Shown here piece after piece: positions 15,657 through 59,174 of a stretch of 64,000 nt of DNA (positions are counted from its first letter, which is position 1; every line of letters starts with the position of its first letter). The stretch spans positions 186,001 through 250,000 of the IMG/VR virus record IMGVR_UViG_3300033153_013547; one strand, 5' to 3'. The notes under the pieces are model-generated. The model was not told the DNA's origin. It worked only from the letters and a program-made list of their open reading frames with translations, and did not search any database. A program made the translations under genes and the position numbers.

Positions 15657-15837
15657 GCAAAAAGCAATAATTTACATTTTTTTGGGTATAATATACTGTG
15701 ATTCGAAAAATTATTTCAATAATTGGTATTCTCTTCTCAATATATTGTCTGTATCAATATATCAAGAAACACAAAGTCAATCCTGCTGTTCTACATACCT
15801 ACAAATTGCTAAGCAATGGGCTACGCTTAGCTATGTC

Positions 15838-16428: not shown

Positions 16429-17209
16429 CATGGCAACAAAAAAGGCAAGAAAAAAAAGAAAGATCTCTGATGCCCAGAAACAAAAAGAAGCAAGAATCAC
16501 AGAATTAGTGATTGAGTACCAGAATGGTAGTGTTGCATCTGATGAATTATTGGATTACTACAACAACTTGTTTAATGCCTATAAATCTTTACTTAAAGAT
16601 GGGAATTACAGGGTCAATAGCAAAAGTGTGACGGAATTTGTCAAATTATTCATGGGAGACAAGGTATCACGTCGAAAAACAAAAAGATACAAGGTTTATA
16701 GTGAATTTTACAACACAGTAAATCATATAAGATATTATATGCAGGATCTTGATGCCAAAGACATAGAACATGAGCTCAAAGTCATATTTCTAACTCTTGC
16801 TAAAAATTGGAAGAAGATGGAGGGAATCGTATTTACAGGATACATAAATGGATTATTTCACTACTATGTCAAGGACTGGGTTAAACGCCACATGACTGGC
16901 GTTCCTAAAGACAAAGATCAAGAAGACATTAATTCTCTCACAAACGTCGTTGCTGATCATGAAGATCCTGCTGATATTGTTATTTCTGACGATATTGACG
17001 AAGACTGGGTTGTAGGACTTACTTGTAAATGGCCATGGACAGAACTAACCAAAGAAGAAAGAGAAGATGTTGTCCTACTTTGGCAAAAAAAGCTCAATCG
17101 TAAAGAATATGCCTATCTCAAGTGTATGAGGCAGTTGGCAGATGTTAGTACAAGAAAAAAACAGATCAAAGACAAGATCAGAACAATTATTAACAAAGGA
17201 AAACAATGA
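16421..17209 (+). CDS. phage sigma-70-like RNA polymerase sigma factor
   Basis: Region-2-like LVIEYQNG...ELLDYY and DIEHELKVIFLTLAKNW...FTGYI; region-4-like ELTKEERE...RKEYAYL. Confidence 0.55.
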   Translation: MYSMATKKARKKRKISDAQKQKEARITELVIEYQNGSVASDELLDYYNNLFNAYKSLLKDGNYRVNSKSVTEFVKLFMGDKVSRRKTKRYKVYSEFYNTVNHIRYYMQDLDAKDIEHELKVIFLTLAKNWKKMEGIVFTGYINGLFHYYVKDWVKRHMTGVPKDKDQEDINSLTNVVADHEDPADIVISDDIDEDWVVGLTCKWPWTELTKEEREDVVLLWQKKLNRKEYAYLKCMRQLADVSTRKKQIKDKIRTIINKGKQ

Positions 17210-17469
17210 TTGACATAAACAAAGTAAAAATGATCAAGAACAAAGTGTTGATAAAGAAAAATGCCCTGGAAGACATTGTACTAAACTCAGGTATTATTAT
17301 TACTAAAGGAGTTCAACAAAGAACCAACAATGGTGTGGTTTTGAGTGTTGGACCAAAGGCAAAATCTGTCAATGTGGGAGACCATGTATGCTTTGTGAAT
17401 TTGATCTGGGATATAAGTGCTGATTATGTTGTTGTGCTAGACAAAGATGTTATTTTGAAATGGAGTTAG
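17206..17469 (+). CDS. groES: GroES/Cpn10 co-chaperonin (copy 1)
   Basis: NKVLIK...NSGIII...GVVLSVGP...VNVGDHV...VVVLDKDVI. Confidence 0.85.
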   Translation: MIDINKVKMIKNKVLIKKNALEDIVLNSGIIITKGVQQRTNNGVVLSVGPKAKSVNVGDHVCFVNLIWDISADYVVVLDKDVILKWS

Positions 17470-18455
17470 CCCCACATCTCCAAAAAATCATTTTTTAGAT
17501 TTAGCTCTTCTCCTAATATTCCATCCATATAAGGTATAATCTGATCTATAGCATCAGATACAGCCTGTTTGACATTCTTTGTTTCAGTCATTTTTACTTT
17601 GAGACCTGTAACCAATGCTTGGGTGATAGGATGAAGAACTTCCTCCTGCTTATCAAATGTCAACGAGTAATTCATCGCATACGCGGCGTTCGATGCGACT
17701 TCAAATATATCGTCAGGATCAGGTAAATCAATTTTCCCATAGGCACTTCGTAACACCGAAACAGATAAAATGCAATCACATTCAATATCTGCATAATGCA
17801 TAAAATTACTCACACTACCATCTGGAACTAATTCCAAGGTTCCGCCATCTATAAATTTACGTGTTCCAATATCCATTGGTCTAAATACACATGGAATAGC
17901 ACTCGACGCTCGCACAAGATCAGATAGTCTCAAGGTAGGTTCGTAAACAAAATTCCACTTGTTCTCCTTGATTACCTCTTGGCTCACAAACTGAAAATCA
18001 TATGGAGGAACACCATCAATAGCTGCTGTGGTAATTAATAATGGGAGATCTACATCTATCATGAGCTTTTTGTTATAAAGTTTTTCTAAAGCTTTATGAA
18101 GGGCAGTCCCTCTCAATAAACCTGTGAAATCAGAATTCTTTCTAAACTTACCCAATATTGGTAGCCTATCTAAAATATATTGTGTAAGATCTTGATCAAG
18201 AATATTTTTCTTCTTGAATTTAGAAATAGCGTCAATCATTTGTTTAATAACAAAGGGATCTTCTAAGACTTTTTTATGATTGAGGGCAATATGAGCTGCT
18301 GCTATAGCCCCTCCAGAGGCTCCTGCAACAGCCACCAACTCTACTTTATCTTTCAGAAGATTACTAAGAATATAATAAGCACCTATACCTGCAGCATAGC
18401 TTTTTAGAGAACATACAGAAATTGATAATGCAATTTTTTTTCTACTCATTGGCAA
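17466..18455 (-). CDS. patatin-like phospholipase
   Basis: GASGG nucleophile elbow, ASSAIPCVFRP and catalytic DGG motif. Confidence 0.85.
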   Translation of the reverse strand: MPMSRKKIALSISVCSLKSYAAGIGAYYILSNLLKDKVELVAVAGASGGAIAAAHIALNHKKVLEDPFVIKQMIDAISKFKKKNILDQDLTQYILDRLPILGKFRKNSDFTGLLRGTALHKALEKLYNKKLMIDVDLPLLITTAAIDGVPPYDFQFVSQEVIKENKWNFVYEPTLRLSDLVRASSAIPCVFRPMDIGTRKFIDGGTLELVPDGSVSNFMHYADIECDCILSVSVLRSAYGKIDLPDPDDIFEVASNAAYAMNYSLTFDKQEEVLHPITQALVTGLKVKMTETKNVKQAVSDAIDQIIPYMDGILGEELNLKNDFLEMWG

Positions 18456-18468
18456 TTATGTTCTCCCT

Positions 18469-18726
18469 TTAATTTGTGTTGCCATTTTTCTTGATAAGAC
18501 TAAGAAAACCAGGAAATTTATACAGGTTTGCTGAGGAAATCACACCCAAAGTCAAAATATACAAATAGGGATCAGCAGAAATTTGTATTAGCTCAGGATA
18601 CCAAATAATCATTATTTTACTAGCCCAAGACAAAATAATATTTAGGGCTAGCAAACTAAATGAAGCTATGATCAATGACATATGCAATGCACTAATTTTA
18701 TCTGATCCTCTGCGTCTTTCTGTCAT
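18469..18726 (-). CDS. putative holin (2 TM helices)
   Basis: Charged N-terminus MTERRRGSD, two hydrophobic segments, basic C-tail; lies downstream of the endolysin. Confidence 0.5.
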   Translation of the reverse strand: MTERRRGSDKISALHMSLIIASFSLLALNIILSWASKIMIIWYPELIQISADPYLYILTLGVISSANLYKFPGFLSLIKKNGNTN

Positions 18727-18814
18727 GTTTTTGTTCCTTCTGTGTGTTGCTTATAGTAATTTGGCACACATCACTGATCCATAGGTTGGATCCGTATAAT
18801 TCACTGTTTTGTTT

Positions 18815-18892
18815 TTAGCCAGCACTAAGAGTTGCTACTGCAGCTGCTCCCAAAATAATTGCCATTATTGTATAAAGAATCAATTCAAGCAT
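18815..18892 (-). CDS. 25-aa single-TM micro-peptide MLELILYTIMAIILGAAAVATLSAG (not in ORF track)
   Basis: Hand translation; GGTGA RBS-like sequence; clear paralogue of 19902-19976. Confidence 0.6.
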   Translation of the reverse strand: MLELILYTIMAIILGAAAVATLSAG

Positions 18893-18907
18893 CGTTATCA
18901 CCATTTT

Positions 18908-19660
18908 TCAATAAGTCAGTATACCATACAAACTACTAATTTTTCTTTCTCTAATATAAACTCCTCCACCTTCTCTTGATCCTGATGGATTAGTATTCCC
19001 TTCAATAGTTACTACATAACCTGGTCTATCAGATAATCGAACGATAAATCCAATATGTCCAACTCTCTTCAGTTTTTTATAATATAACAAAAAACATGCC
19101 CCTGGCTTGATCAATTTCCAATCAGCAAGCAAAGAATTGACAGGCAACCATGTTTTAGATTTCTTAGCTGCATTTAACCAACTTGGAGTGTATCCTTTAT
19201 ATGCTGTGGGAATTTTTATAGGAGAGGATTTGCCCAAGGTTGCTGCAGCTTCTGCAATACACCACCATGTAAAGGCAGCACACCATGGTTGAGGAGAATC
19301 ATAGCCAGCAGATTTCAAATATTTCTTTACTGGTCCCCAATTGCTATTTTTAGGCACTTCTCTAACACCATTTTCTTCAAGAGCTATTTCCAGTGCCTTT
19401 TTCATCATACCTTTAGGTTTAGCAGTATTCCATCCTGGTACTTGAGAATTGTTGAGAGCCCACCAAGTTGCTGGTCCAACTATTCCATCTATTTCCAGTG
19501 GAAGATCATCTGGTCCATCACACTTGGCTTGAAAATCTAATACAGATTCCAGTGTTTTAGGACCAAATATACCATCTACTACAATCTTGAAACCAACTGA
19601 TTTCAATAGACGTTGTAGTTTTTTTACAGGTGCACCCTTAGTACCAATTGTGATCCACAT
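18908..19660 (-). CDS. endolysin: PG_binding_1 domain plus CHAP domain
   Basis: VKKLQRLL...VDGIFGPKT...DGIVGPATW (PG binding); PWCAAF, GHIGFI, TIEGNT (CHAP Cys/His); GGAGGA RBS. Confidence 0.9.
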   Translation of the reverse strand: MWITIGTKGAPVKKLQRLLKSVGFKIVVDGIFGPKTLESVLDFQAKCDGPDDLPLEIDGIVGPATWWALNNSQVPGWNTAKPKGMMKKALEIALEENGVREVPKNSNWGPVKKYLKSAGYDSPQPWCAAFTWWCIAEAAATLGKSSPIKIPTAYKGYTPSWLNAAKKSKTWLPVNSLLADWKLIKPGACFLLYYKKLKRVGHIGFIVRLSDRPGYVVTIEGNTNPSGSREGGGVYIRERKISSLYGILTY

Positions 19661-19725
19661 TGTGTCCTCCAGTAATCATATATTTATTAGTTTGTTTTTT
19701 ACTATTTTTTTCATTTATATGCTAC

Positions 19726-19842
19726 TTATTTGTTGTCTTCTTCCTTCTTCCTAACAAAAGCCCCAATCAAAGACCAGAAGACAGTTCTAAGTCCTTTCCA
19801 AATTGATTTACGAATTATTGTCCAGTTAATTTTCTTACTCAT
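19726..19842 (-). CDS. 38-aa cationic amphipathic peptide MSKKINWTIIRKSIWKGLRTVFWSLIGAFVRKKEEDNK (not in ORF track)
   Basis: Hand translation; strong GGAGGA RBS; immediately upstream of the endolysin. Confidence 0.6.
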   Translation of the reverse strand: MSKKINWTIIRKSIWKGLRTVFWSLIGAFVRKKEEDNK

Positions 19843-19901
19843 TGTTGTTATCCTCCAGTGGCCCTTCTGTTTTTCATTGTTGTTCCTCTTTTGTTGTTGT
19901 G

Positions 19902-19976
19902 TTAGGCAAAGGTGGCTACAGCTGCAATACCCAAAACAACTGCAAGCACTGTTGCAATAATTAGGTCAAAAAACAT
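19902..19976 (-). CDS. 24-aa single-TM micro-peptide MFFDLIIATVLAVVLGIAAVATFA (not in ORF track)
   Basis: Hand translation; GAGGTG RBS; paralogue of 18815-18892. Confidence 0.6.
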   Translation of the reverse strand: MFFDLIIATVLAVVLGIAAVATFA

Positions 19977-20010
19977 TTTCTGCACCTCATTTTTATTATT
20001 ATCCACATAA

Positions 20011-49595: not shown

Positions 49596-50562
49596 TAGCA
49601 GAATAAATTGTTTTATATTTTTCTATACACTTATTATAGCCAAAATTGTTAATCACATGATCAAAGATTTTGCTATAATTCATAGCAGTTGTCATACATT
49701 TCTTATACGACAATCCTGCTTGCTCAATCAATGATAGAATATTAGCATCAGGATTCTTCCGATTCTTACGCATGATAGCATCAGCTATGTACATAGAAGA
49801 TATTTCTGTTACAGCATCACCCAATGTACGCATTTCACTGGTACTTATATTGGGTGGATTGAAGTCACTATTGTACAGTAACTCCCAACTATTAGGAATT
49901 ACTGGTGCAACTTTACCAGTACTATAGTTGGGTATCAAAACAGGCACCTTAGAAGCCAAACATGCTAAAACTTTGATACCTGATGTTATAACACAAGCAC
50001 TTTTCTTTGCTACAAGATTGATTAGTGGCACAATAGGTGCTATCTTTAGTATTTCTGGAGGCATCTTCTCTTTGATCACAAGTTGATTCATCTCATCAAC
50101 TCTATCAAAAGGTACCATCAATATCATTGACATATTCATGCTCAGAAAAAATCTGACTGTTGATAGAGCAAGCCTACAGGCAGCAAGAGGGTTTTGGTGT
50201 TCTATCATTACTACCGTGCCACAATAGGACCTTTTTTCTGTTATAACACAAGGAGGAGCTCTAGGTATTCCATACTTTCTGGATAAAACCAGTGAGTGAC
50301 ATATTGTATTTTCAGGATGTAAATTCAGTGCTTGCTTGCATTCTTTGTCTGAATACACACTCCAAAGTACTTTATGATCCTTGAGAATATCTTTATCAAA
50401 AAGATATCCATGATAGTGCAAAACACCTGATCCATGCTCTGAAAAATTGTCTAAATGAACCAATTCTGACATATTGCCATTAGTCAATTGCAGAGCATGG
50501 AATACTGAATCCTCAGTTGAATAGACATCCTGTTTATTCAATACTTGTAAAACTTTACTCAT
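49555..50562 (-). CDS. divergent GT-B glycosyltransferase-like protein
   Basis: SACVITSGIKVLACLASKVPVLI resembles the GT-B C-terminal motif, with the usual Glu missing. Confidence 0.4.
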   Translation of the reverse strand: MSKVLQVLNKQDVYSTEDSVFHALQLTNGNMSELVHLDNFSEHGSGVLHYHGYLFDKDILKDHKVLWSVYSDKECKQALNLHPENTICHSLVLSRKYGIPRAPPCVITEKRSYCGTVVMIEHQNPLAACRLALSTVRFFLSMNMSMILMVPFDRVDEMNQLVIKEKMPPEILKIAPIVPLINLVAKKSACVITSGIKVLACLASKVPVLIPNYSTGKVAPVIPNSWELLYNSDFNPPNISTSEMRTLGDAVTEISSMYIADAIMRKNRKNPDANILSLIEQAGLSYKKCMTTAMNYSKIFDHVINNFGYNKCIEKYKTIYSAIESGKQATSCFEM

Positions 50563-51007
50563 CGACCTGCAAGCCTAAGTCCTTATCAAGTTGTGCCATT
50601 GATCTCTTATATGCTGCTTCTGTATATGAAGATGACCACCCATAGCGTGCTCCAAATCTCATCAGAAAACTGGCAGCTCTTTTCATGGCAGTAATCCTCT
50701 GAGTTGGTGCCATAGTTACATCAACCTGCATGGCATCAATGATTACCATAGCCACATGCAATGGATCATCTTTGCCAAAGATCTCTTCGTCCCTTTCTCT
50801 TATACGTTGTTCTATTTCTGCTAACTGCTTGTAAGTGATCTGATCACCTGGCTTGATGTGTGGCTTGATATGTGGAGGAATAAGTTCCTCTGGAACCATA
50901 TCATTTTCACTAGGCTTGGCATCTACTTCCTCAGCAGGCTGTTCCCTTTTGTCCTCTACCACAACTTCTTCAATTACTGCCTCTTCAATCAATTTTTCAT
51001 CACTCAT
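50555..51007 (-). CDS. hypothetical protein
   Basis: GGAGG RBS. Confidence 0.6.
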   Translation of the reverse strand: MSDEKLIEEAVIEEVVVEDKREQPAEEVDAKPSENDMVPEELIPPHIKPHIKPGDQITYKQLAEIEQRIRERDEEIFGKDDPLHVAMVIIDAMQVDVTMAPTQRITAMKRAASFLMRFGARYGWSSSYTEAAYKRSMAQLDKDLGLQVDE

Positions 51008-51048
51008 ACGTTCAAATACCTCCGTCTATTTATCAAACAATATCATAG

Positions 51049-51300
51049 TTAATGTTGCAATGTAGCAATAACACTCACTATATGATCGAATTTTACATAA
51101 TAATATCGATCAATAACCGTAGGTTTGGTGACATCAAACATCGATCCACAGATATCTCTTCTGTCTTTCATTTGATGAACCAATTCTTCTACTTCATGAG
51201 AAGATATGTTCTCTAAATCTATTACATGTAACTCCCCATGAATTTCCACTTTTATTTCAACATCATAGAAATCATCATCTCTAAAATTCAGTTCTTTCAT
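51049..51300 (-). CDS. hypothetical protein
   Basis: ATGA coupling to the DnaE-C stop. Confidence 0.6.
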   Translation of the reverse strand: MKELNFRDDDFYDVEIKVEIHGELHVIDLENISSHEVEELVHQMKDRRDICGSMFDVTKPTVIDRYYYVKFDHIVSVIATLQH

Positions 51301-52391
51301 GATGGTTCTTTTACCTCCAACTGTTCCAACTCAAACACTTTCTTAATTACTATTGTGCCTCTATTACTTACCTTTCCCTCAATACACACAGGATTATTAT
51401 TAACCAGTAATCCCAGTGAGGCAATATCTTTCTCATCATCTTCATCATAAAAATATATGCATGGTAGATGAGTTATCCCGTCAGAAATTTCAAACACAAG
51501 GTAAGGGGTTCCTTTTCTGCTAATAAATGATCTTCTTGAAGAAACAAGACCAACATACTGCCCCTGAACCTTGCCTATTTGTCTTGATTCCGTAGGATTA
51601 TGAGCTCCTGCAGGTATATTATAAGCATCTAAAATGCCACCAGAAATATACACTCCCAAGATCTCAAACTCCATGGAACTTAATTCAGCCTTACTAAACT
51701 CCCCTATGATTACAAGTTCATCTATATCTAGATCAAGAGGTAATGGCTCACGTGATTCTGCCTTTTTATTCTTTAGCCTTGCTTTATTCTTAGCATTCCA
51801 TTCATGTATTTTTCTATAAGCATATAAGAGAGCTTTACGTGTCAGCACAACATCACTATTATCTAACAGAGGTATACCATCAAACGCACCTATTTTGATT
51901 AGATTAATCATTCCATCTTTACGTGCTGTGCCCCTAACTACAATATCCTGCACAGATTTATATGGTCCATTGTCTTCTCTGTTTTTTACAATGACACTGG
52001 CTGAATTTAGCCCCACCTTCCTTACAGAAGTCAGCCCAAACATAATATGTCTAACTTTGTCATCGTCTTCATATGGTGTAAACATAGTACCAGAAATGTT
52101 GATCCTTGGTGGTGAGAGCTTTATTTTCAATTGTTTACACTCCTTCATGAAATCCCTAAGAGTATTCTCAAGATCATCTCCACTTTTAGACTCAATAGCA
52201 TCAATCATAGATGCAGCAATAAAAATATGTGGCCAGTATGTTTTTACATAGGCAGTATGATAGGTCAAGATAGCATAAGATACTGAATGACTGTTCTGAC
52301 TAACCAAAAATTGTTTAGCCCTTTCATCTGTTACTAGATAATTGTGAGGAGGACCATCAAGTGAAAGACTTATAAAGGCTTTTTTATTCAT
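51297..52391 (-). CDS. dnaE: DNA polymerase III alpha, C-terminal piece with N-terminal split intein half (IntC)
   Basis: IntC ...PHNYLV...FLVSQN followed by extein SHSVSYAILTYHTAYVKTYWP; PPRINIS; HhH FGLTSVRKVG; LIKIGAFD; EFEILGVYISG; OB fold. Alternative TTG start at 52418. Confidence 0.92.
   Translation of the reverse strand: MNKKAFISLSLDGPPHNYLVTDERAKQFLVSQNSHSVSYAILTYHTAYVKTYWPHIFIAASMIDAIESKSGDDLENTLRDFMKECKQLKIKLSPPRINISGTMFTPYEDDDKVRHIMFGLTSVRKVGLNSASVIVKNREDNGPYKSVQDIVVRGTARKDGMINLIKIGAFDGIPLLDNSDVVLTRKALLYAYRKIHEWNAKNKARLKNKKAESREPLPLDLDIDELVIIGEFSKAELSSMEFEILGVYISGGILDAYNIPAGAHNPTESRQIGKVQGQYVGLVSSRRSFISRKGTPYLVFEISDGITHLPCIYFYDEDDEKDIASLGLLVNNNPVCIEGKVSNRGTIVIKKVFELEQLEVKEPS
52293..52391 (-). 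mobile_element. split intein C-half (IntC, ~33 aa)
   Basis: Block F-like FISLSLDGPPHNYLV and block G LVSQN/S. Confidence 0.85.
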
Positions 52392-52875
52392 ACCTTGTTC
52401 CCATCCATCTACAGACAATTAATCCAGAATTGATCTTTTCATAATTCACACAAATATCCAAAAACTGATCAACAGTAGCAATAGCACTATCAGTTCCTGC
52501 TGTTTTTAGTGCTCTTGCAAATATTTGCCTATTTTTATCCTGATCTATTACACCACGAATATTCTCCATTACATTCCACTTTTGAGCCATTTGTCTAATA
52601 CAAGTCCAGTGAGTCATCAATATAGGATCCTTGTTGATATTACGTCCATATCCACGAATTGTGGGTAGTTCAGAGGCACCAGCCTGCTTAAATACTTTTG
52701 ACATACTACGTATTATGCTTGATCCCTTACAATAAAAATAATCAGTTCCTGGTAACTCATCACGTTTAACTACAATAGCTGTTGTTGATCTCATCCTTGT
52801 ATCTTTAGGTAATTTGATCAAATAGTAATTATTACCACATATACTAACTTTGCCAATTATATTGTTATCCATCAA
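52384..52875 (-). CDS. hypothetical protein between the two split-intein halves
   Basis: AAAGGA RBS; overlaps the IntN stop and the IntC start; no recognisable endonuclease motif. Confidence 0.7.
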   Translation of the reverse strand: MMDNNIIGKVSICGNNYYLIKLPKDTRMRSTTAIVVKRDELPGTDYFYCKGSSIIRSMSKVFKQAGASELPTIRGYGRNINKDPILMTHWTCIRQMAQKWNVMENIRGVIDQDKNRQIFARALKTAGTDSAIATVDQFLDICVNYEKINSGLIVCRWMGTRYE

Positions 52876-54541
52876 TTAATAGTCCTTTATTATCTATTAC
52901 AACTAGACAATTACACTCATTTGGCATTTTATACCCATCTTCATTGAGGAAGTAATGATCTCTTGTGCATTCTATTTCAACATTTTCATTGCCTACTTTA
53001 ACTATTGGTTCATCAAAAGCAAAAGTTACTGCTCTCACAGTATTAGTTATTATTCCACCATTGCCCACATAAGAATAAATAGTATCTCCAAAGTTCAACT
53101 GATCTATTCTTACAAGACCACTTGGTGTCAAAACCAAAGTATCTTCACTCAGACACTTATTGAAACCATAATTTCCAAAACCTTCTATCTGTTCCCATAG
53201 TTTGGTAGCTTCTTCTAACGTCCAGCCTGAATGACGGACACAACCATCAATAAATTTTGGCTTAGCCTGAGCAAGCTTAGAGGACAACTTTTTACCAACA
53301 ATTCTTCTTAGGTTATCCCCCTCATTAGGACTAAACCCAGCAATTTTCTGAGCTATTTCTATAATACTTTCTTGGTATATGATAAGACTAGAAGTTTTTT
53401 CCAATATAGGTTTCAGATCATCATGCAAATATTCTGGCTTTGTCCTTCCATGCCTAAGAGAAAGGTATTTTTCTTCAAATCCTGCTGACATAGGTCCAGG
53501 TCTGTGTAGAGCTATAACATCTGAAATATCTTCTATGCTAGTAGGCATACATTTCTGCATAGTTTTCCTGATCCCCACAGATTTCATTTGAAATAACCCA
53601 GCATACAAGCCTTTTTGCATAAATTCAAAAACCTTAGGATCATTCATGGGAATATCATCAATAGTCATACTATTTTCAATGTATCCCATGCTATGAGCCA
53701 TATTCAAAGTGTTTTGTATAACTGACAATGTGCCAAGACCTAAAAAATCTATTTTACATAAGCCTGCTAACCCTGCAGACTTCATATCTAGTTGCACAAC
53801 ATTGTTACCACTAGCATCTACATACATAGGCACAATTGACTGCAATGGCTCATTAGATATTATGATCCCAGCAGCATGCAATCCAGTCTGTCTATAATTT
53901 TGCCTGAGGGAATTAAATATAGCAATAAATTCATCTATGTCCTCAAGACAATTTTCACCCAAAGTCTGCTTGCTTACCTCAACAATTTTAGCAACATACT
54001 GCCTTAGTTCTTCATGAATAAATATTTCATCAGTCCCTATCCAGTCTCCAGTGCTCATATCTACATTAGTAGCAGGCAAATACATTTTAGATATCAAGCC
54101 AACAGATGCTTCTTCACTGCTTCCACATATACATCTAACTATGTCTCTAAAAGCAGACTTAGGTTTGTATTCTGCATAAGTGCCTATGCTGGCAAAATAT
54201 TTGTTACCATATTTACTTCTGACAGCATCTTTCACTCTGTCTCTACCATACTTGTCAAAATCTATGTCAAAATCTGGTTGCTCTCTTTTGACAACAAGAC
54301 CAAACTCTCCATCAGGTTTTTTGCTTGTGATCCCAAGAGCATATGCTAACAATGAATTAGTCTTGTTCTTGTTGCCTGCTCCACAATCACAAGCCTTATT
54401 GATCATATAAATCATATGATCATCAACATGATAGAATTCATATAAATCAAGTTCGTTAGAGATCCTGTCCATCTCTTCTTTACTAAACTTTTTCTCCCAT
54501 CGTTCAGTCTGCTGGTGACAAAAATCCCTTAGTTGGCTCAT
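52865..54541 (-). CDS. dnaE: DNA polymerase III alpha, catalytic middle piece with C-terminal split intein half (IntN)
   Basis: PDFDIDF, GLHAAGIII, KIDFLGL, GLFQM, LHRPGPM, IYQE, LRRIVGKK, YGFNK then CLSEDT intein. Confidence 0.93.
   Translation of the reverse strand: MSQLRDFCHQQTERWEKKFSKEEMDRISNELDLYEFYHVDDHMIYMINKACDCGAGNKNKTNSLLAYALGITSKKPDGEFGLVVKREQPDFDIDFDKYGRDRVKDAVRSKYGNKYFASIGTYAEYKPKSAFRDIVRCICGSSEEASVGLISKMYLPATNVDMSTGDWIGTDEIFIHEELRQYVAKIVEVSKQTLGENCLEDIDEFIAIFNSLRQNYRQTGLHAAGIIISNEPLQSIVPMYVDASGNNVVQLDMKSAGLAGLCKIDFLGLGTLSVIQNTLNMAHSMGYIENSMTIDDIPMNDPKVFEFMQKGLYAGLFQMKSVGIRKTMQKCMPTSIEDISDVIALHRPGPMSAGFEEKYLSLRHGRTKPEYLHDDLKPILEKTSSLIIYQESIIEIAQKIAGFSPNEGDNLRRIVGKKLSSKLAQAKPKFIDGCVRHSGWTLEEATKLWEQIEGFGNYGFNKCLSEDTLVLTPSGLVRIDQLNFGDTIYSYVGNGGIITNTVRAVTFAFDEPIVKVGNENVEIECTRDHYFLNEDGYKMPNECNCLVVIDNKGLLIDG
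52868..53155 (-). mobile_element. split intein N-half (IntN, 96 aa)
   Basis: Block A CLSEDTLVLTPSG and block B IECTRDHYF; the ORF stops with no C-terminal blocks. Confidence 0.9.
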
Positions 54542-54599
54542 ATCCTCTCCACTATATTTCTTTTGTCTCAGTAGCTTCTTTGTCTAATGGTTCTCTCAT

Positions 54600-54917
54600 T
54601 CAGTCTGCTTCTTTGTCAAACAACTGGGGCATCATGGATTCTAACATATCTGTTACATCATCTAACCTTTCCTTTAGTATATCAATCTTTTCTTCCAGTG
54701 CTTCAAGCTTCTGACTCATGTCTTCTGTATAGATCACATGGGTTGGAGCAGGAGGATAACCACCATCAGGATAAGGTAAGGGAGTACCAATAAATGAGTC
54801 AGGAATTAGTGGATCCTGCTTCCATGTATAATCAGTTGTTCCACTATCTGTGATTTCTATCCAATTGTGATCATTGGTGCGGTAAATTCCATGCATACTA
54901 TTATCATCACTAAACAT
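54600..54917 (-). CDS. hypothetical protein with coiled-coil C-terminus (paralogue of 55539-55910)
   Basis: KLEALEEKIDILKERLDDVTDMLESMMPQLFDKEAD. Confidence 0.65.
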   Translation of the reverse strand: MFSDDNSMHGIYRTNDHNWIEITDSGTTDYTWKQDPLIPDSFIGTPLPYPDGGYPPAPTHVIYTEDMSQKLEALEEKIDILKERLDDVTDMLESMMPQLFDKEAD

Positions 54918-54925
54918 TTACACTC

Positions 54926-55564
54926 TCACTTCCTTTGGTAATTGTGCGCCAATAATTGTATATCATCACTATGACGCAAACCTACTTTCTCTAACCTCTC
55001 TGCCTCGCGTTTTATTACATACAAACACAATGACGGCTTAGCAAGTAACATTCGCTTTGTTGCAGTAAAGGCATAATCATTACAATAACCATAATAACCA
55101 CCCTTACACAAATTATCTAATTTGTGGGCATAACGTTTGCCTGCAGAGGTAAGATCTAGTCTATAGGTGAATTTTTCATTCCACTCTAACATTTGAAAGG
55201 GAAATTCTGCCACATAATGACTTTCTATGTATGCCCTATATGGATCAAGTAAATAAGCATGTCGACCTGCATTTATTCTGGTAGTCTTGATCATCCCAAA
55301 TGCCACTAAATAATTTATTGCTTCAAATAGTTGCTTACTACATGCACCATACTTTGTCATAATAAAATCATTTTTCAGATTTATTTTATTATGCCTATGT
55401 CCTAGTATACCTATACCAGGATGCATGTAAAGACACAGATAAGTCATGTCATCAAGACCCAGCACAGGTTTACTATTGTTATAAAACAGTATTCTAACAA
55501 CATAATCACGTATACCAAGGTCTAGAGGTTGCCATGTATTACCATTCATGAGCACTATCCTCAT
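54926..55564 (-). CDS. winged-helix protein, YwgA/Panacea(SocA)-like
   Basis: YGACSKQLFEAINYLVAFGMI...LDLTSAGK pattern. Confidence 0.4.
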   Translation of the reverse strand: MRIVLMNGNTWQPLDLGIRDYVVRILFYNNSKPVLGLDDMTYLCLYMHPGIGILGHRHNKINLKNDFIMTKYGACSKQLFEAINYLVAFGMIKTTRINAGRHAYLLDPYRAYIESHYVAEFPFQMLEWNEKFTYRLDLTSAGKRYAHKLDNLCKGGYYGYCNDYAFTATKRMLLAKPSLCLYVIKREAERLEKVGLRHSDDIQLLAHNYQRK

Positions 55565-55910
55565 CTAACGATTTTCTCATCCAATCTGCTTCCTTATCAG
55601 ACAATTTTGGCATCGCAGATTCTAGCATATCTATTATGTCTTCTAACTTATCTTTTAGTATGCCAATATCTTCTTGCAATTTATCAATCTTTTCTGCCAT
55701 GGATAGAGGCATAGCATATGATAACATGTTGGACATCATTGCCTGTGTATCTATTGCAACATCATTGTTGGGATCATTAAGAACACGTAAATCATCAATA
55801 TGATAATCACCCTGCACTCTATTTACGTCTGCTACCAATCTTGCTCTTGCTGGCTCTGACAACGATGACCAATCAAAAGATTGCAGAATTTCACCATCGT
55901 AATATACCAC
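55539..55910 (-). CDS. hypothetical protein with coiled-coil C-terminus (paralogue of 54600-54917)
   Basis: KIDKLQEDIGILKDKLEDIIDMLESAMPKLSDKEADW. Confidence 0.65.
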   Translation of the reverse strand: MVYYDGEILQSFDWSSLSEPARARLVADVNRVQGDYHIDDLRVLNDPNNDVAIDTQAMMSNMLSYAMPLSMAEKIDKLQEDIGILKDKLEDIIDMLESAMPKLSDKEADWMRKSLDEDSAHEW

Positions 55911-57142
55911 TATTCTTCACCTATTCCAAAATCATCATAGCACACAGTAGATCTACCATAATTCAAAAACCTGCTAAACATCAGCCCATACTTTATTGGA
56001 TCAACACTAGTTATACCAAGTGAGTATGCTGCAATTGATCCTGCTCCAGAACCTCTGCCTGCACCCACACCAACATTCAGCGTCCTTGCAGTATCTACTA
56101 TATCAGACACTAAAAGAAAATAATCTACATAGCCCATCTTGTCAATAATGAACAATTCATGATCTAATCTATCAGTAATTTCTTTAGACAAATTCTGGCT
56201 ATAGAGTTGTCTGGCTCCATCATAGCATTTGTCTCTAAGAATTTTTGTCTTATATGCATATGAAAGTGTCTTGTCTCTGATCCTAAATTCAGGCATATAT
56301 GATTTGCCAAGAGCAAGTTTAAACTCTACCTTATCTACTATTTCCATTGTATTCTGACAAAGAGGGATTGCATCTATGCCCACACTATTATATCTTTCTA
56401 TAATTTCATCATATGAATGAAGATAATAAGAATGAGTGCCTGAGAATGGTTTAATACCTATTTTGTTAGATGAAGAAAACCTTACTGCCTGCAAGAAGCC
56501 ATGAGCCTTCCAGTCAGAAGCATTTAGATAATGGGCATCTGTGGCACAAATAGTTTTGATGCCCATCTCATTCAGAAATACTTCTGCCACAACCTTTTCT
56601 TCTGGAATATCATGTGCATGAACTTCAAGATAAAAATCTTCCTTGAAGGCTTCTACAAACCTATCAAGCAGGGTTTTATACACATCCATATGTCCTGATG
56701 TAATAAGCCTTTGCAGACTTCCAGATATACAACTTGCTGTTGCTATGAGACCTTCAGAATTCTGCAAAACGCTGTCCATGGGAAAAATCGTTCGGCTGAT
56801 ATTGTCTCTACCCACTCTCGTTTTAGAAGCACCCAAAAGCTTGAGAAGATTATGCCAGCCTGCTTCGGTCTTTGCTATCAGAACCAGATGTGACTTAGGA
56901 TATTCTATGCCAAAATCAGAGTTGATATACTTTACATAAGCTTCTATTGCTATAATAGGTTTAATACCATAATTCTCACATTCAATAGTTTGCTCAACAC
57001 AAGCACCCAATGAGCCATGATCACTTATGGAGACTGCTTTTTGTCCTAGTTCTATAGATCTTTTAATAATATCTTTGGGTCTTCCAAGGGCATCAAGAAC
57101 AGAATAAGAACTATGAATATGAAGATCACAGAATTCACTCAC
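55910..57142 (-). CDS. dnaE: DNA polymerase III alpha, N-terminal piece (PHP domain plus GS-motif segment)
   Basis: LHIHSSYSVLD, SDHG, HLVLIAK, SCISG, TDAHY, GRGSGAGS, DPIKYGLMFSRFLN; ends before the PDxDxDF motif. Confidence 0.93.
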   Translation of the reverse strand: MSEFCDLHIHSSYSVLDALGRPKDIIKRSIELGQKAVSISDHGSLGACVEQTIECENYGIKPIIAIEAYVKYINSDFGIEYPKSHLVLIAKTEAGWHNLLKLLGASKTRVGRDNISRTIFPMDSVLQNSEGLIATASCISGSLQRLITSGHMDVYKTLLDRFVEAFKEDFYLEVHAHDIPEEKVVAEVFLNEMGIKTICATDAHYLNASDWKAHGFLQAVRFSSSNKIGIKPFSGTHSYYLHSYDEIIERYNSVGIDAIPLCQNTMEIVDKVEFKLALGKSYMPEFRIRDKTLSYAYKTKILRDKCYDGARQLYSQNLSKEITDRLDHELFIIDKMGYVDYFLLVSDIVDTARTLNVGVGAGRGSGAGSIAAYSLGITSVDPIKYGLMFSRFLNYGRSTVCYDDFGIGEE

Positions 57143-57384
57143 TATCTATCTCCCTTCAGGCTTTTCTCATTTTTATGCAATTGCATTTGTATTTTCTTGA
57201 TACAATCTCGTAGAGAGTCTATAGAAAGCATGGCAAGTGCTATTTCATGTGTCTCCTCATCCAATATATGCTTATTTGATATAAATTCTAACACATTAGC
57301 CTCAAGCCATTCTAAATTAAGAAGACAGACATCTCCTTTATCTACTACAGACTGAGCACTTTCTGGTGCTTTTATTACATTCAT
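57142..57384 (-). CDS. hypothetical protein
   Basis: Coupled ORF with GGAG RBS. Confidence 0.55.
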   Translation of the reverse strand: MNVIKAPESAQSVVDKGDVCLLNLEWLEANVLEFISNKHILDEETHEIALAMLSIDSLRDCIKKIQMQLHKNEKSLKGDR

Positions 57385-58082
57385 TATGCATCTCCTGCAA
57401 CATCAAGACCACCAAATGTTTTCATGTCTGGCAGACTAATAGAAGGTTTTATGTCTTGATTACCTTGACTTGAGAATTGTTTATGCTCTTCTCTGCTACT
57501 AAATAAATCTAGATAGGTAGCATGGGCTATCATTATGGCTGCTGCAATAACTCCACCAACATCCTCCCTACCAAGAATTTTAGATCCCAACATAACACCT
57601 GTTAAGATCTCTTGTCTGTTATCATTTATTCCAAGCCGTTGATCCCTAGTAAATACTGGTAGCAAATGGAAGAGCATCTTAGACACAAAATCTACCCACA
57701 TATCAGTTACATCATAATATTTGTGCTTGCAAGACCCCAATATGAAATTGATAAATATTGCCGTCGTTACTACAGATTCTATGAGCAATGGATGCTCAAG
57801 ATCACCTAAATCAACGTCACTCAAAACTAATTGCATATCCAATGTTTCATTTAATTTACCACCATCAAAATCAAGCCTACGCAATTCGTTTGTTCCTGCT
57901 GATATGAATTCTTTACTGATACTATCTGCGGATTTGGTTATCATTTTGACAGCTTCTGCAGGAGTTAGTGTAACGACCTCAGCACCAGATTTCTCCTCTA
58001 GCTCAGATTCAATCTCACTCAAATCTTTTGCGTTTTTCATCCTAGACAATTTTCCACCCATAAGATCATTCAAAATTGACAT
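57384..58082 (-). CDS. hypothetical protein
   Basis: 232-aa coupled ORF. Confidence 0.6.
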   Translation of the reverse strand: MSILNDLMGGKLSRMKNAKDLSEIESELEEKSGAEVVTLTPAEAVKMITKSADSISKEFISAGTNELRRLDFDGGKLNETLDMQLVLSDVDLGDLEHPLLIESVVTTAIFINFILGSCKHKYYDVTDMWVDFVSKMLFHLLPVFTRDQRLGINDNRQEILTGVMLGSKILGREDVGGVIAAAIMIAHATYLDLFSSREEHKQFSSQGNQDIKPSISLPDMKTFGGLDVAGDA

Positions 58083-58519
58083 TATTTGTCTCCCTCAACA
58101 TCTATTGGAACTAGATCTACGGTAATACTCTTGACAGTATCATACTGTAGATTATTTATTATGTTTCTGCCTTCTATCAATTTGGCAGAAACCACAAAAC
58201 ACATGTTGTTAGACTCAATCTCCAACGATACATCATATAGTTTCTTACCATCTTCTACAATATAATCGTTGGCATCAACAACAATTACAGCATATATTGC
58301 TTGATCACAACAGAGCACTGGGTATATGCTGTTTCTAGTTATTCCTAATTCATGTAATATTTGATGATAAGCCTGTCCTAGCTGTATAAATGCTTCTGCA
58401 TTACCATGATCCATATCTGGATGAACTTCTTTAGCAAGCTTTTTATATGCTCTATCAAGAGACTGCTTGGACAATTTCTCCATCTTTTGCTTCAACAGAG
58501 CGTGATAATTCTGCTTCAT
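58082..58519 (-). CDS. DnaJ J-domain protein
   Basis: AYKKLAKEVHPDMDHGNAEAFIQLGQAYHQIL (HPD motif). Confidence 0.85.
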   Translation of the reverse strand: MKQNYHALLKQKMEKLSKQSLDRAYKKLAKEVHPDMDHGNAEAFIQLGQAYHQILHELGITRNSIYPVLCCDQAIYAVIVVDANDYIVEDGKKLYDVSLEIESNNMCFVVSAKLIEGRNIINNLQYDTVKSITVDLVPIDVEGDK

Positions 58520-59174
58520 GTTCTAATACCAACTCAATTACTGTAGAAAGTGCATCTACCATACGAGATCTAACCTGTATAGCTTTATTAGTATTTTGGC
58601 TCAACATTCTATGGTAAAAAGCTGGATGATACATGGGCACAAACTTACAACTAACTCCATTCCTAGTAACATCATATGTTCCACCACAACATTTACTAAT
58701 TGGGATATGAATATCAAACAACTTTAGCACTGCAGCTCCACATCCCAACACAACAGAAGGACGAACATGATTCCACATATGATCAAATACTGGAATACAA
58801 GCAGCATATTCATCATCAGAAGGTGTTCTGTTACGTTGTGTTCCTTCAAACACAAACTGGCATCTGGCCATATTAGTAAATAATCCTCTTCTTAGAGGTG
58901 TATCATCAGAATCTGTGTCCTTTTGCCAATTAGTCTGGGCTTCTTTCATTATACCTCTTAGAACCTTACCAGCTGCTCCTACAAATGGTCTGCCCTGTTT
59001 GATTTCGTCTCTGCCAGGATTCATGCCAATTATTACATAGCTAGGATCTGCTGCCCCTTCATCAAAAACAGGTCTTAGCCCATTGACTGGATCATTGTAA
59101 CGTATAGCTCCTGGGCATTTCTGACAATCAAAAAAATCTTTGTAAAACAACACATTGTTAGGTTTGTATATCAT
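58455..59174 (-). CDS. uracil-DNA glycosylase, family 4-like
   Basis: CQKC...PVFDEG...IGMNPG..E...GRPFVGAAGKVL, TNMARC, NRTP, YHPA. Confidence 0.88.
   Translation of the reverse strand: MIYKPNNVLFYKDFFDCQKCPGAIRYNDPVNGLRPVFDEGAADPSYVIIGMNPGRDEIKQGRPFVGAAGKVLRGIMKEAQTNWQKDTDSDDTPLRRGLFTNMARCQFVFEGTQRNRTPSDDEYAACIPVFDHMWNHVRPSVVLGCGAAVLKLFDIHIPISKCCGGTYDVTRNGVSCKFVPMYHPAFYHRMLSQNTNKAIQVRSRMVDALSTVIELVLEHEAELSRSVEAKDGEIVQAVS

What the first reader, a model, noticed from the sequence alone, without database searches (positions are those of the whole stretch)
54250..56260. Intein-less DnaE break with a degenerate duplication of the palm-proximal segment
Seen: the end of piece 1 (LRDKCYDGARQLYSQNLSKEITDRLDHEL...VGAGRGSGAGSIAAYSLGITSVDP) is echoed at the start of piece 2 (LRDFCHQQTERWEKKFSKEEMDRISNEL...CGAGNKNKTNSLLAYALGITSKKP). 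The second copy has lost the RGS motif but leads straight into PDFDIDF. The first copy keeps RGS but stops before PDxDxDF. Inference: neither piece has a complete active site. The duplicated helices may act as a docking or domain-swap module that builds the catalytic centre in trans.
Basis: partly seen in the sequence, partly recalled or inferred. Interest (0 to 1): 0.8.

Follow-up and report, generated by a model that had tools for sequence, protein, structure and literature searches.

The report
Naturally split phage DnaE with duplicated half-palm
The echo is real: this jumbo phage makes its replicative DNA polymerase from separate proteins that break, without an intein, between two old tandem copies of a palm segment, an arrangement shared by many uncultured phages and apparently not yet described.

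Summary
Piece 1 residues 302-400 and piece 2 residues 4-103 are homologous: BLASTP E=3e-7, z=14 against shuffles, and both match Pfam PF07733 positions 3-101.

It is not a private or recent accident.
- All 15 other loci where the upstream DNA could be read, mostly 58-494 kb phage contigs, carry the same two-gene layout. The gap ranges from a 1-nt stop/start overlap to 2.9 kb and holds unrelated ORFs.
- At least nine relatives carry both copies in one polypeptide. On a tree they interleave with split forms.
- So the duplication is old, and the break sits in the linker between the copies.

The copies decayed in complementary ways.
- Copy 1 keeps G-R-G-S and the ERF arginine in 14/14 sequences but has only a vestigial DF(G/F) strand.
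- Copy 2 keeps DxDxDF in 23/23. It has lost the GS glycine and carries an invariant Asn in place of the Ser.

The PHP metal ligands, third Asp, fingers and HhH domain are intact. No intron, intein or homing endonuclease lies at this break.

Most likely the pieces assemble non-covalently into one polymerase. Whether piece 1 completes the active site in trans (my preferred reading) or only docks a PHP proofreader is unresolved. It needs a complex model or biochemistry.

The parts
55910..57142 (-). DnaE piece 1 (410 aa, GTG start): PHP domain plus copy 1 of the N-terminal palm segment
   Evidence: ORF list. Pfam PHP at residues 6-177 (E=4.7e-37) and PF07733 positions 2-101 at residues 301-400. 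All nine PHP metal ligands are invariant in alignment A4: H8 H10 D17 H42 E67 H85 C138 D202 H204. AF2 mean pLDDT 87.1.
55943..56239 (-). Copy 1 of the duplicated palm segment (piece 1 residues 302-400), canonical-like, with the G-R-G-S loop and the ERF-type Arg391
   Evidence: BLASTP against piece 2. Maps to Taq 382-460, including G425/S426 and R452. G362 R363 G364 S365 S369 D381 P382 R391 are invariant in 76 sequences. pLDDT is mostly above 85.
56048..56056 (-). RGS motif of copy 1 (R363 G364 S365), the nucleotide-triphosphate-binding loop of C-family polymerases
   Evidence: 14/14 family copy 1 sequences keep G-R-G-S. Two single-chain relatives have an intein inserted exactly at GRG|S.
55913..55942 (-). 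Piece 1 tail CYDDFGIGEE: a vestige of the catalytic strand PDFDIDF, with the first Asp and Phe kept and the others lost, followed by acidic residues
   Evidence: Alignment with canonical DnaE. Column counts D463 13D+1E, F464 14/14, D465 0/14. Conserved in P0002, P0050 and L025. pLDDT below 50 in isolation.
55539..55910 (-). ORF123, first gene in the gap. Its GTG start overlaps the piece 1 stop (TAGTG). Its C-terminal 39 aa are paralogous to ORF105.
   Evidence: (59% identity, E=1e-13). No Pfam or PADLOC family; only a marginal PHROG match (phrog_473, E=0.0078, no stretch passing on its own).
54926..55564 (-). ORF212, an orphan gene in the gap; possible winged-helix DNA-binding protein (lead only)
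   Evidence: Only itself found among 5.8e9 clusters. No Pfam, PHROG or PADLOC family. ESM feature hits of 0.91-0.94 to viral hypotheticals, some HTH_36/MarR.
54600..54917 (-). ORF105, third gene in the gap, paralogue of the ORF123 C-terminus. The similarity continues past its stop to about 54567.
52865..54541 (-). DnaE piece 2 (558 aa): copy 2, catalytic Asp strand, rest of palm, thumb, fingers, then an N-intein. It has its own GGAGAGG ribosome-binding site.
   Evidence: Pfam PF07733 at residues 4-268 and finger domain at 271-437. K263 and D265 (third Asp), R347 PGP and Q390 are invariant. AF2 pLDDT 86.8; Foldseek to Pol III alpha 2HPI E=2.5e-26. RBS.
54278..54541 (-). Copy 2 of the duplicated palm segment (piece 2 residues 1-88). 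The GS glycine and the preceding strand are lost, and the helix ..NSLLAYALGITS.. is kept.
   Evidence: The family profile A2 scores the window's protein at E=1.6e-27. pLDDT is 82-92 for residues 1-30, 58-69 for 31-60 and about 85 for 61-80.
54353..54367 (-). Copy 2 loop N59-K-T-N62-S63, the counterpart of S-G-A-G-S in copy 1
   Evidence: N at the GS serine position in 23/23, N at Taq 429 in 22/23, S430 in 23/23. The GS glycine position is variable: K10 R6 E5 V1 D1.
54257..54277 (-). Catalytic strand P89-D90-F-D92-I-D94-F95
   Evidence: D90, D92, D94 and F95 are invariant. Predicted beta strand at 91-96.
52868..53152 (-). N-terminal half of a split intein at the end of piece 2 (starts CLSEDTLV after ..YGFNK)
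   Evidence: The alignment to Taq ends at ..nygfnk|cl. Weak Hint_2 match at residues 1-28, E=0.002, below Pfam's cut-off.
52384..52875 (-). ORF163, a free-standing gene between the intein halves, in the position of the endonuclease in 'fractured genes'; no recognisable domain
   Evidence: Arrangement as described in PMC2677866.
51297..52418 (-). DnaE piece 3 (373 aa): short C-intein (..LVSQN|SHS..), then the end of the fingers and the HhH beta-binding domain
   Evidence: Pfam HHH_6 at residues 98-182. PHROG 405 positions 794-1042.

Best explanation
What it is:
- The window encodes one C-family replicative polymerase (DnaE) as three polypeptides.
- The piece 2/3 break is a split intein, which rejoins the chain.
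- The piece 1/2 break is an intein-less gene fission. It lies in the linker between two tandem, anciently duplicated copies of the N-terminal palm segment (helices A-E plus the loop before the catalytic strand).
- This duplication defines a large lineage of DnaE genes in uncultured, mostly jumbo phages. The lineage includes single-chain enzymes with both copies and, more often, two-gene enzymes cut between the copies. The cut has arisen or been healed several times, and the gap then collects unrelated small genes.

How it most likely works:
- Pieces 1 and 2/3 associate non-covalently into one enzyme.
- Copy 1 stays with the intact PHP exonuclease domain and has kept the triphosphate-binding G-R-G-S loop and the ERF arginine.
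- Copy 2 has lost the GS glycine and leads into the three catalytic aspartates.
- My preferred reading is that copy 1's loop completes the polymerase centre in trans. Copy 2 and the conserved DF(G/F)-acidic tail of piece 1 would then form the interface that holds the subunits together.

Shown: the homology, the family-wide architecture, the complementary motif retention, and the absence of splicing elements.

Inferred: physical assembly, and which loop sits at the active site.
For: - Homology of the two segments.
- Same two-gene layout, with piece 1 upstream of piece 2, in 15/15 further loci where the upstream DNA is available. The gap runs from a 1-nt overlap (TGATG in L025) or 14 bp (L006) to 2.9 kb (L017), with unrelated ORFs.
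- Single-chain relatives with both copies: the RGS-to-DxDxDF distance is 140-158 aa instead of about 38, and PF07733 matches twice. The fused P0299 lies in the same gene order as the split loci: Mtase, DnaE, RecA, Toprim.
- Fused and split forms are sister pairs with local support 88-100. Starred branches force at least 7 changes of state. Two split sisters were checked at the DNA level.
- Complementary conservation. Copy 1: G423 R424 G425 S426 S430 R452 in 14/14, D465 in 0/14. Copy 2: G425 in 0/23, S426 replaced by N in 23/23, D463/D465/D467 in 23/23.
- Inteins sit exactly in copy 1's GRG|S in two fused relatives, a sign of a constrained functional site.
- The rest of the enzyme is intact: nine PHP ligands, K263/D265, fingers, HhH.
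- AF2: copy 1 is confident but its strand before GS has no partner and its tail is disordered in isolation. In piece 2 the region equivalent to that strand and loop is the weakest part (pLDDT 58-69).
- Overlapping stop/start, a good RBS and no terminator-like sites: one transcription unit.
Against: - No model or measurement of the complex was possible, and the coordinates of the AF2 models were not available. The position of either loop relative to the aspartates is therefore unknown.
- Copy 2 keeps nearly the canonical spacing from its helix to the Asp strand (27 aa in the window, 31 in the main clade, 32 canonical). It keeps an Arg or Lys at the ERF position in 21/23 sequences.
- Copy 2 has invariant Asn/Asn/Ser in the loop, and its helix (AYALG.T) is closer to canonical than copy 1's helix in the main clade. 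This fits copy 2 sitting in the canonical site with a modified loop.
- AF2 placed helices A', B' and D' of piece 2 with pLDDT 82-92 without piece 1.
- The profile-profile match between family copy 1 and family copy 2 is weak (hhalign E=0.017). In most relatives only the last third of copy 2 is recognisably palm-like (Pfam positions 68+).
- The window's piece 2 sits on a long, unresolved branch of the tree.
Confidence: 0.5

Rival explanations
1. Same two-subunit enzyme, but pieces 2+3 hold a self-contained polymerase centre. Copy 2 occupies the canonical palm position, and its K/R-N..N-S loop replaces GS. Piece 1 is a separate PHP proofreading exonuclease. Its copy 1 and tail serve only to dock it onto the polymerase, much as epsilon docks on E. 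coli alpha.
For: - Copy 2 keeps nearly the canonical helix-to-strand spacing, the Pro, and an Arg or Lys at the ERF position in 21/23 sequences.
- It has invariant polar residues in the loop.
- Its helix is more canonical than copy 1's helix in the main clade.
- AF2 folds piece 2 alone with pLDDT 86.8, and Foldseek aligns about 470 columns to Pol III alpha.
- The PHP ligands are all intact, so piece 1 has a plausible job of its own.
Against: - If copy 1 were only a docking handle, its G-R-G-S loop and ERF arginine should have drifted. They are invariant in 14/14 split and all fused relatives.
- An intein sits in that very motif in two relatives.
- The glycine of GS is replaced in copy 2 by K, R, E, V or D, with no conservation. 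That is odd for a residue contacting the triphosphate.
- The strand and loop region of copy 2 is the least confident part of the piece 2 model.
Confidence: 0.35
2. A recent insertion of a mobile cassette (homing endonuclease or similar) broke a normal dnaE and duplicated the target. The gene is decaying and the phage relies on another polymerase.
For: - 1.3 kb with three ORFs lies between the pieces.
- Two of these ORFs share a repeated 3' part.
- Phage genes split by free-standing endonucleases are known (PMC2677866).
Against: - The break and both copies are shared by distant relatives (27-59% identity) with different gap contents, including a 1-nt overlap and a 14-bp gap.
- Copy 2 is orthologous across the family.
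- No endonuclease domain was found in the gap ORFs.
- All catalytic residues are intact.
Confidence: 0.03
3. Pieces 1 and 2 are rejoined covalently by an intron, an atypical short-N split intein, or translational bypassing.
For: - The next break in the same gene does use a split intein.
- The piece 1 tail contains a Cys.
Against: - No Rfam family matches 50000-58500 at E<=1.
- There are no Hint blocks. The tail Cys is Leu in the 59%-identical relative.
- Piece 2 starts with palm-like helices, not an intein C-part.
- Joining the pieces would still leave both copies in the chain, as in the natural fused forms.
- A gap of up to 2.9 kb holding expressed-looking ORFs rules out bypassing.
Confidence: 0.02

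Closest known systems
Cyanobacterial split DnaE (Synechocystis/Nostoc DnaE-n and DnaE-c, split intein; cited in PMC2677866)
   Same: The catalytic alpha subunit of a C-family replicase is encoded by separate genes, and both parts are needed for one enzyme.
   Different: There the halves are ligated by protein trans-splicing at a site in the fingers, the genes lie at distant loci, and nothing is duplicated. Here the piece 1/2 break has no intein, lies in the palm just before the catalytic strand, is flanked by two copies of a ~100-aa segment, and the genes stay adjacent.
'Fractured genes': split intein plus a free-standing endonuclease gene between the halves (Dassa et al. 2009, PMC2677866)
   Same: This describes the piece 2/3 break of this same gene (N-intein, ORF163, C-intein). 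That paper reports three fractured DnaE loci from marine and lake metagenomes.
   Different: It does not describe the piece 1/2 break. ORF163 has no recognisable GIY-YIG or Vsr-like domain.
Two-gene B-family DNA polymerases without inteins: gp43 of some T4-like phages, and PolB of Methanothermobacter (as summarised in PMC2677866)
   Same: A replicative polymerase is encoded by two adjacent genes separated by up to 2-3 kb, sometimes with inserted genes, and is thought to assemble non-covalently.
   Different: They belong to a different polymerase family and fold. As far as I know (own knowledge, not checked here), no duplicated overlap with complementary active-site motifs has been reported at those breaks.
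Aeromonas phage Aeh1 NrdA split by the mobE homing endonuclease (Edgell and co-workers, as cited in PMC2677866)
   Same: An essential phage enzyme is cut into two genes that still form an active complex.
   Different: That split was caused by an identifiable endonuclease gene, is lineage-specific, and has no duplication.
Canonical DnaE1/DnaE3 (E. coli 2HNH, Taq 2HPI/3E0D, M. tuberculosis 7PU7)
   Same: Same domains in the same order: PHP, palm, thumb, fingers, HhH. Piece 1 is 35-38% identical to Clostridia-type DnaE. The catalytic residues are all present.
   Different: Canonical enzymes are one chain with one copy of the palm segment (RGS to DxD about 38 aa). Surveys of bacterial C-family polymerases (PMC3919608, PMC12926913) do not mention this duplicated or split form in the passages matching my search terms.

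Membership tests
C-family DNA polymerase, DnaE type | N-terminal PHP domain with the nine metal ligands | tested here: met
   Pfam PHP E=4.7e-37. H8 H10 D17 H42 E67 H85 C138 D202 H204 are invariant in A4.
C-family DNA polymerase, DnaE type | Pol-beta-like palm with a GS loop, DxD on the next strand and a third Asp, in one polypeptide | tested here: inconclusive
   All residues are present but split between two proteins. RGS and R391 are in piece 1. D90/D92/D94 and K263/D265 are in piece 2. Whether they form one site was not testable.
C-family DNA polymerase, DnaE type | Fingers domain and HhH (beta-binding) domain | tested here: met
   PF17657 E=5.1e-45 in piece 2 and PF14579 E=1.5e-16 in piece 3. 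Foldseek to 2HPI E=2.5e-26.
C-family DNA polymerase, DnaE type | C-terminal OB fold and tau-binding domain | not tested
   Pfam reported no OB domain in piece 3. The last ~190 aa were not studied further.
Split-intein ('fractured') gene break, applied to the piece 1/2 junction | Hint blocks A/B at the end of the upstream piece, blocks F/G with a terminal Asn at the start of the downstream piece, and a nucleophile at +1 | tested here: not met
   No Hint/intein family in piece 1 or at the start of piece 2. Only 10 residues follow the last palm-like position. Piece 2 begins with palm-like helices.
Group I / group II intron in a phage gene | A structured RNA matching a known intron family between the exons | tested here: not met
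   cmscan of 50000-58500 at E<=1 gave 0 matches. Unknown intron types cannot be excluded by this test.
Gene split by a free-standing homing endonuclease (mobE/NrdA type) | A recognisable endonuclease gene (GIY-YIG, HNH, LAGLIDADG, Vsr-like) in the gap | tested here: not met
   ORF123, ORF212 and ORF105 have no Pfam or PADLOC family; the only PHROG match is a marginal one for ORF123 (phrog_473, a virion structural protein family, E=0.0078). ORF212 has no homologue.
Two-copy-palm phage DnaE lineage (defined here, not a published family) | Copy 1 with G-R-G-S and ERF followed by a DF(G/F)-acidic tail. Copy 2 with N..N-S-x-x-AY.LG.T-..P then DxDxDF. Piece 1 immediately upstream of piece 2, or fused to it. 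| tested here: met
   Window sequence against A1/A2/A5. Profile A2 scores the window's piece 2 at E=1.6e-27. Column counts. The window lacks the acidic linker ending GGVDRY that the largest sub-clade has.

The most novel reading that the evidence does not exclude
This is a natural replicative polymerase whose catalytic centre is shared between two polypeptides. The triphosphate-binding GS loop and arginine come from a half-palm attached to the PHP proofreader. The metal-binding aspartates come from the other subunit. The two are held together by pairing of two paralogous half-palm modules created by an ancient tandem duplication. On this reading the duplication is what made repeated intein-free fission of an essential polymerase tolerable.
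Probability: 0.42. Interest if true: 0.8.

Novelty: new variant of a known kind. Interest (0 to 1): 0.62.

Why it matters
Split replicative polymerases are known, but those in DnaE use inteins. This lineage shows an essential C-family polymerase tolerating, many times over, a break next to its catalytic strand with no splicing. It appears to tolerate this because a duplicated half-palm flanks the break.

- It is a natural experiment on how gene fission can pass through viable intermediates: duplicate first, then cut between the copies.
- It defines a large, unannotated branch of phage DnaE. 77 of the best 150 representative clusters at 50% identity are PHP-less piece 2-type and at least 9 are fused, many from marine contigs of 200-500 kb.
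- It explains why annotation pipelines see 'partial' or PHP-less DnaE genes in jumbo phages.
- If the centre is truly composite, it offers a self-assembling split-polymerase scaffold. It would also give a new view of what the GS loop does in Pol III.

Tried and rejected
- Megablast of 51000-57400 against GenBank phages: no match. tblastn of the pieces found only relatives at 36% identity or less, all canonical single-copy or differently split.
- PB1-like Pseudomonas phages and Burkholderia phage Maja looked like PHP-less candidates. They turned out to have a degenerate PHP and one canonical copy with RGS, so they say nothing about this lineage.
- Rfam at E<=1: nothing.
- Promoter and terminator scans: no enrichment, no terminator.
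- Direct and inverted repeats in the gap: only the ORF123/ORF105 paralogy.
- ORF212: no homologue. The ESM Atlas gave winged-helix leads only.
- ORF163: nothing.
- PADLOC: nothing.
- hhalign of family copy 1 against family copy 2 was weak (E=0.017). Homology therefore rests on the window's own pair and on Pfam and PDB mapping, not on that comparison.
- Foldseek of the piece 2 model gave only whole-chain matches to Pol III alpha, with no detail on the N-terminal module. Model coordinates are not exposed.
- No public sequencing run was listed for the region, so RNA or DNA joints could not be checked.
- Four literature searches, plus term searches inside three papers, found no description of this architecture. 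This shows absence in the library searched, not proof of novelty.

Full report
WHAT IS THERE

The window is part of IMG/VR contig IMGVR_UViG_3300033153_013547, 261 kb. It has about 36% G+C, and genes in the region run on the minus strand.

The neighbours form a phage replication and recombination module: a Rad52-like protein, RecA, YopX, a family-4 UDG and a DnaJ-domain protein.

A DnaE-type polymerase is encoded in three ORFs:
- Piece 1, 55910-57142: 410 aa, PHP domain plus Pfam PF07733 positions 2-101.
- Piece 2, 52865-54541: 558 aa, PF07733 positions 3-260, the finger domain, then an intein N-part starting CLSEDT.
- Piece 3, 51297-52418: 373 aa, a short intein C-part, then the end of the fingers and the HhH domain.

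Between pieces 1 and 2 lie ORF123, ORF212 and ORF105. Between pieces 2 and 3 lies ORF163.

CHECKING THE OBSERVATION

- Piece 1 residues 302-400 align with piece 2 residues 4-103 at 30% identity, E=3e-7.
- The local alignment score is 88, against 24 +/- 4 for shuffles, z=14.
- Pfam covers about 100 profile positions twice.
- Both segments map to the same residues of Taq Pol III alpha. Piece 1 321-399 equals Taq 382-460, which includes G425/S426 (the GS loop) and R452. Piece 2 36-137 equals Taq 403-510.
- Assigning those Taq residues to triphosphate binding rests on my knowledge of the Taq and E. coli structures. It was not tested here.

Piece 1 does not stop cleanly before the catalytic strand. 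Its last residues..CYDDFGIGEE, align with PDFDIDF: the first Asp and the Phe are retained and the other two Asp are lost.

THE BREAK IS LINEAGE-WIDE

Searching with piece 1 found short DnaE N-terminal proteins that end the same way:
- P0002: 59% identical, ends ..STVLFDEFGIGEE...
- P0050: 38% identical, ends ..YDFGI.

P0050 lies on a 401-kb contig. There it is followed by two small unrelated ORFs and then a PHP-less DnaE with its own N-terminal palm-like module.

Searching with piece 2 found many PHP-less DnaE proteins whose N-termini share a motif of the form N-x-(I/V)-N-S-(W/L)-x-AY-x-LG-(M/L)-T-x-K-x-P. This is followed about 20 residues later by PD(I/V)DxDF.

I fetched their contexts and scanned IMG/VR with that motif. 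This gave 13 further loci on contigs of 58-494 kb, and L025 added later made 15 with P0050's locus. In every one, a piece 1 gene lies upstream of the piece 2 gene.

The gap varies widely: a 1-nt stop/start overlap (TGATG, L025), 14 bp (L006), up to 2.9 kb (L017). It holds different ORFs in different phages, for example a dCMP deaminase in L010. The break is therefore old, and the space it opened has been colonised independently.

THE DUPLICATION ALSO EXISTS IN SINGLE CHAINS

A profile of 22 copy 2 modules (A2) was searched against 1.84 billion representative proteins. It gave 1,203 hits at E<=1e-10. Of the best 150, 147 were newly returned and were classified by simple motif rules:
- 77 are PHP-less piece 2-type proteins.
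- 44 are canonical DnaE.
- 9 are full-length DnaE of about 1,040-1,170 aa in which the module lies at about residue 430-590. Three more (P0258, P0327, P0339) were seen by eye. In these, RGS and DxDxDF are 140-158 residues apart instead of about 38, and PF07733 matches twice.
- The remaining few could not be classified.

These chains read: PHP, copy 1 (RGS, ERF, DF(G/F)), a short linker, copy 2, DxDxDF, then the rest.

The fused P0299 lies in the same gene order as the split loci: methyltransferase, DnaE, three small genes, RecA, Toprim primase.

A FastTree of the palm core and fingers places fused forms as sisters of split forms:
- P0299/P0313, support 100.
- P0295/P0302, support 99.
- P0332/P0273, support 98.
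- P0260/P0272, support 96.
- P0289/P0293, support 88.

At least seven changes of state are forced by well-supported branches. I confirmed at the DNA level that P0293 and P0313 are true split genes: each has an in-frame stop upstream, a ribosome-binding site, and piece 1 ending ..DDFGMGGA.

Caveats: this is a quick tree, deep branches are unresolved, the window's piece 2 sits on a long branch, the direction of change is unknown, and not all 'split' calls were verified.

COMPLEMENTARY DECAY

Column counts over 14 copy 1, 23 copy 2 and 25 canonical sequences, in Taq numbering:

| Position | Copy 1 | Copy 2 |
|---|---|---|
| G423, R424 | kept 14/14 | G423 20/23; R424 variable |
| G425 | kept 14/14 | K/R/E/V/D, Gly 0/23 |
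| S426 | kept 14/14 | Asn 23/23 |
| G429 | G or A | Asn 22/23 |
| S430 | kept 14/14 | kept 23/23 |
| D442 | kept 14/14 | variable (K15 E4 Y2 L1 R1) |
| P443 | kept 14/14 | kept 23/23 |
| R452 | kept 14/14 | Arg/Lys 21/23 |
| D463 | D or E, 14/14 | kept 23/23 |
| D465 | G or F, Asp 0/14 | kept 23/23 |
| D467 | lost | kept 23/23 |

In two fused relatives an intein is inserted exactly at GRG|S of copy 1. Inteins typically persist in constrained functional motifs (general knowledge), so this points the same way as the invariance.

The rest of the enzyme looks active:
- All nine PHP metal ligands are present.
- The third Asp (K263, D265), the finger Arg-Pro-Gly-Pro and other invariant residues are present.
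- The HhH domain is present.

STRUCTURE PREDICTIONS

- Piece 1: mean pLDDT 87.1. Residues 295-390 are confident. The stretch before GS is not assigned as a strand, so it has no partner within piece 1. Residues 395-410 are below 50.
- Piece 2 residues 1-463: mean pLDDT 86.8. Helices at 2-36 score 82-92. Residues 31-60, the counterpart of helix C, the strand and the GS loop, score 58-69. Residues 61-80 score about 85. The Asp strand is at 91-96.
- The piece 2 model matches Pol III alpha over about 470 columns.
- Coordinates are not exposed and no complex could be modelled. These results fit both mechanistic readings below.

HOW IT MOST LIKELY WORKS

Shown: one transcription unit with coupled or well-signalled starts (TAGTG overlap, GGAGAGG before piece 2, no terminators). 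There is no intron family, no intein and no endonuclease at this break.

Inferred: pieces 1 and 2/3 assemble non-covalently, as the single-chain relatives imply.

I favour, at about 0.5, a composite centre. Copy 1's GS loop and arginine would complete the site formed by piece 2's aspartates. Copy 2 and the DF(G/F)-acidic tail would provide the interface.

The main rival, at about 0.35, is that copy 2 sits in the canonical position with a modified Asn-containing loop. Piece 1 would then be a docked PHP proofreader.
- For the rival: copy 2's near-canonical spacing to the strand, its conserved helix, and its invariant polar loop residues.
- Against it: copy 1's untouched catalytic-type residues across the whole lineage, and the unconstrained residue at copy 2's GS-glycine position.

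Recent mobile-element damage and covalent rejoining are each unlikely, at 0.03 or less.

COMPARISON WITH WHAT IS KNOWN

- The piece 2/3 break is an ordinary 'fractured gene' (Dassa et al. 2009, PMC2677866).
- The piece 1/2 break resembles the intein-free two-gene PolB of some T4-like phages and of Methanothermobacter, and the split NrdA of phage Aeh1 (all as cited in that paper). It differs in three ways: it occurs in a C-family enzyme, it lies next to the catalytic strand, and it is flanked by a duplicated module with complementary motifs.
- Term searches within two surveys of C-family polymerases (PMC3919608, PMC12926913) and four keyword searches did not turn up this architecture.
- No cultured phage in GenBank is closer than about 36% identity.

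VERDICT

The feature is a new variant of a known kind (split polymerases) and marks a sizeable unannotated phage DnaE lineage. Interest is 0.62. It would rise to about 0.8 if the active site proves to be composite.

Noticed in passing
window 51297-53152 (piece 2 C-terminus, ORF163 52384-52875, piece 3 N-terminus): The second break of the same dnaE is a split intein inserted after ..YGFNK, with Ser as the +1 residue (..LVSQN|SHS). A 163-aa domain-less ORF lies between the halves. This is the 'fractured gene' layout, but without a recognisable endonuclease, and the C-intein lacks the usual penultimate His.
   Followed up: partly
window 54567-54719 and 55542-55700: ORF123 and ORF105 share a 39-aa C-terminal coiled-coil-like segment (59% identity). 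The similarity runs on past the ORF105 stop almost to the piece 2 start. So a short block (gene end plus downstream leader) is repeated before ORF212 and before piece 2.
   Followed up: partly
L006 5800-5986, L010, L013-L021 (ends of piece 1): In the largest sub-clade, piece 1 carries an extra acidic linker of about 40 aa ending in a conserved C-terminal GGVDRY. The window, P0002, L003, L009 and L025 lack it. It looks like a C-terminal docking peptide. Not studied.
   Followed up: no
P0322 residues ~377-860 and P0259 ~364-830 (single-chain relatives): Large inteins are inserted exactly inside copy 1's GRG|S motif, using the motif's Ser as the +1 nucleophile. Other relatives carry inteins elsewhere: in piece 1 (L010, L015, L018) and in the fingers (P0242, LAGLIDADG type).
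   Followed up: partly
L003 11632-16231: In the 401-kb relative, piece 2 ends early at 409 aa, inside the fingers. It is followed by two LAGLIDADG-like ORFs and then a 216-aa ORF with a faint OB-fold hit. That phage's dnaE therefore seems to be broken at further places.
   Followed up: no
P0020, P0097, P0069, P0009, P0022, P0048 (hits): Many DnaE N-terminal proteins of 514-547 aa, from contigs of up to 648 kb, all end a few residues after ..QASTHAC, where full-length relatives continue ..THACGV.. This is a recurrent frame change or break at the same motif. It could be an intron, recoding or a programmed frameshift.
   Followed up: no
P0372 (1258 aa, hit): A canonical single-copy DnaE has a family-4 uracil-DNA glycosylase-like domain fused to its N-terminus. 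In the window, a family-4 UDG gene (58455-59174) lies just upstream of dnaE.
   Followed up: no
window 54926-55564 (ORF212): This gene has no sequence homologue among 5.8 billion clusters. Its ESM feature neighbours (0.91-0.94) are viral hypotheticals, some with HTH_36 or MarR winged-helix domains.
   Followed up: partly
window ~14000-20000: GC skew and AT skew change sign near 18 kb. This suggests a switch of coding strand or of transcription module there.
   Followed up: no
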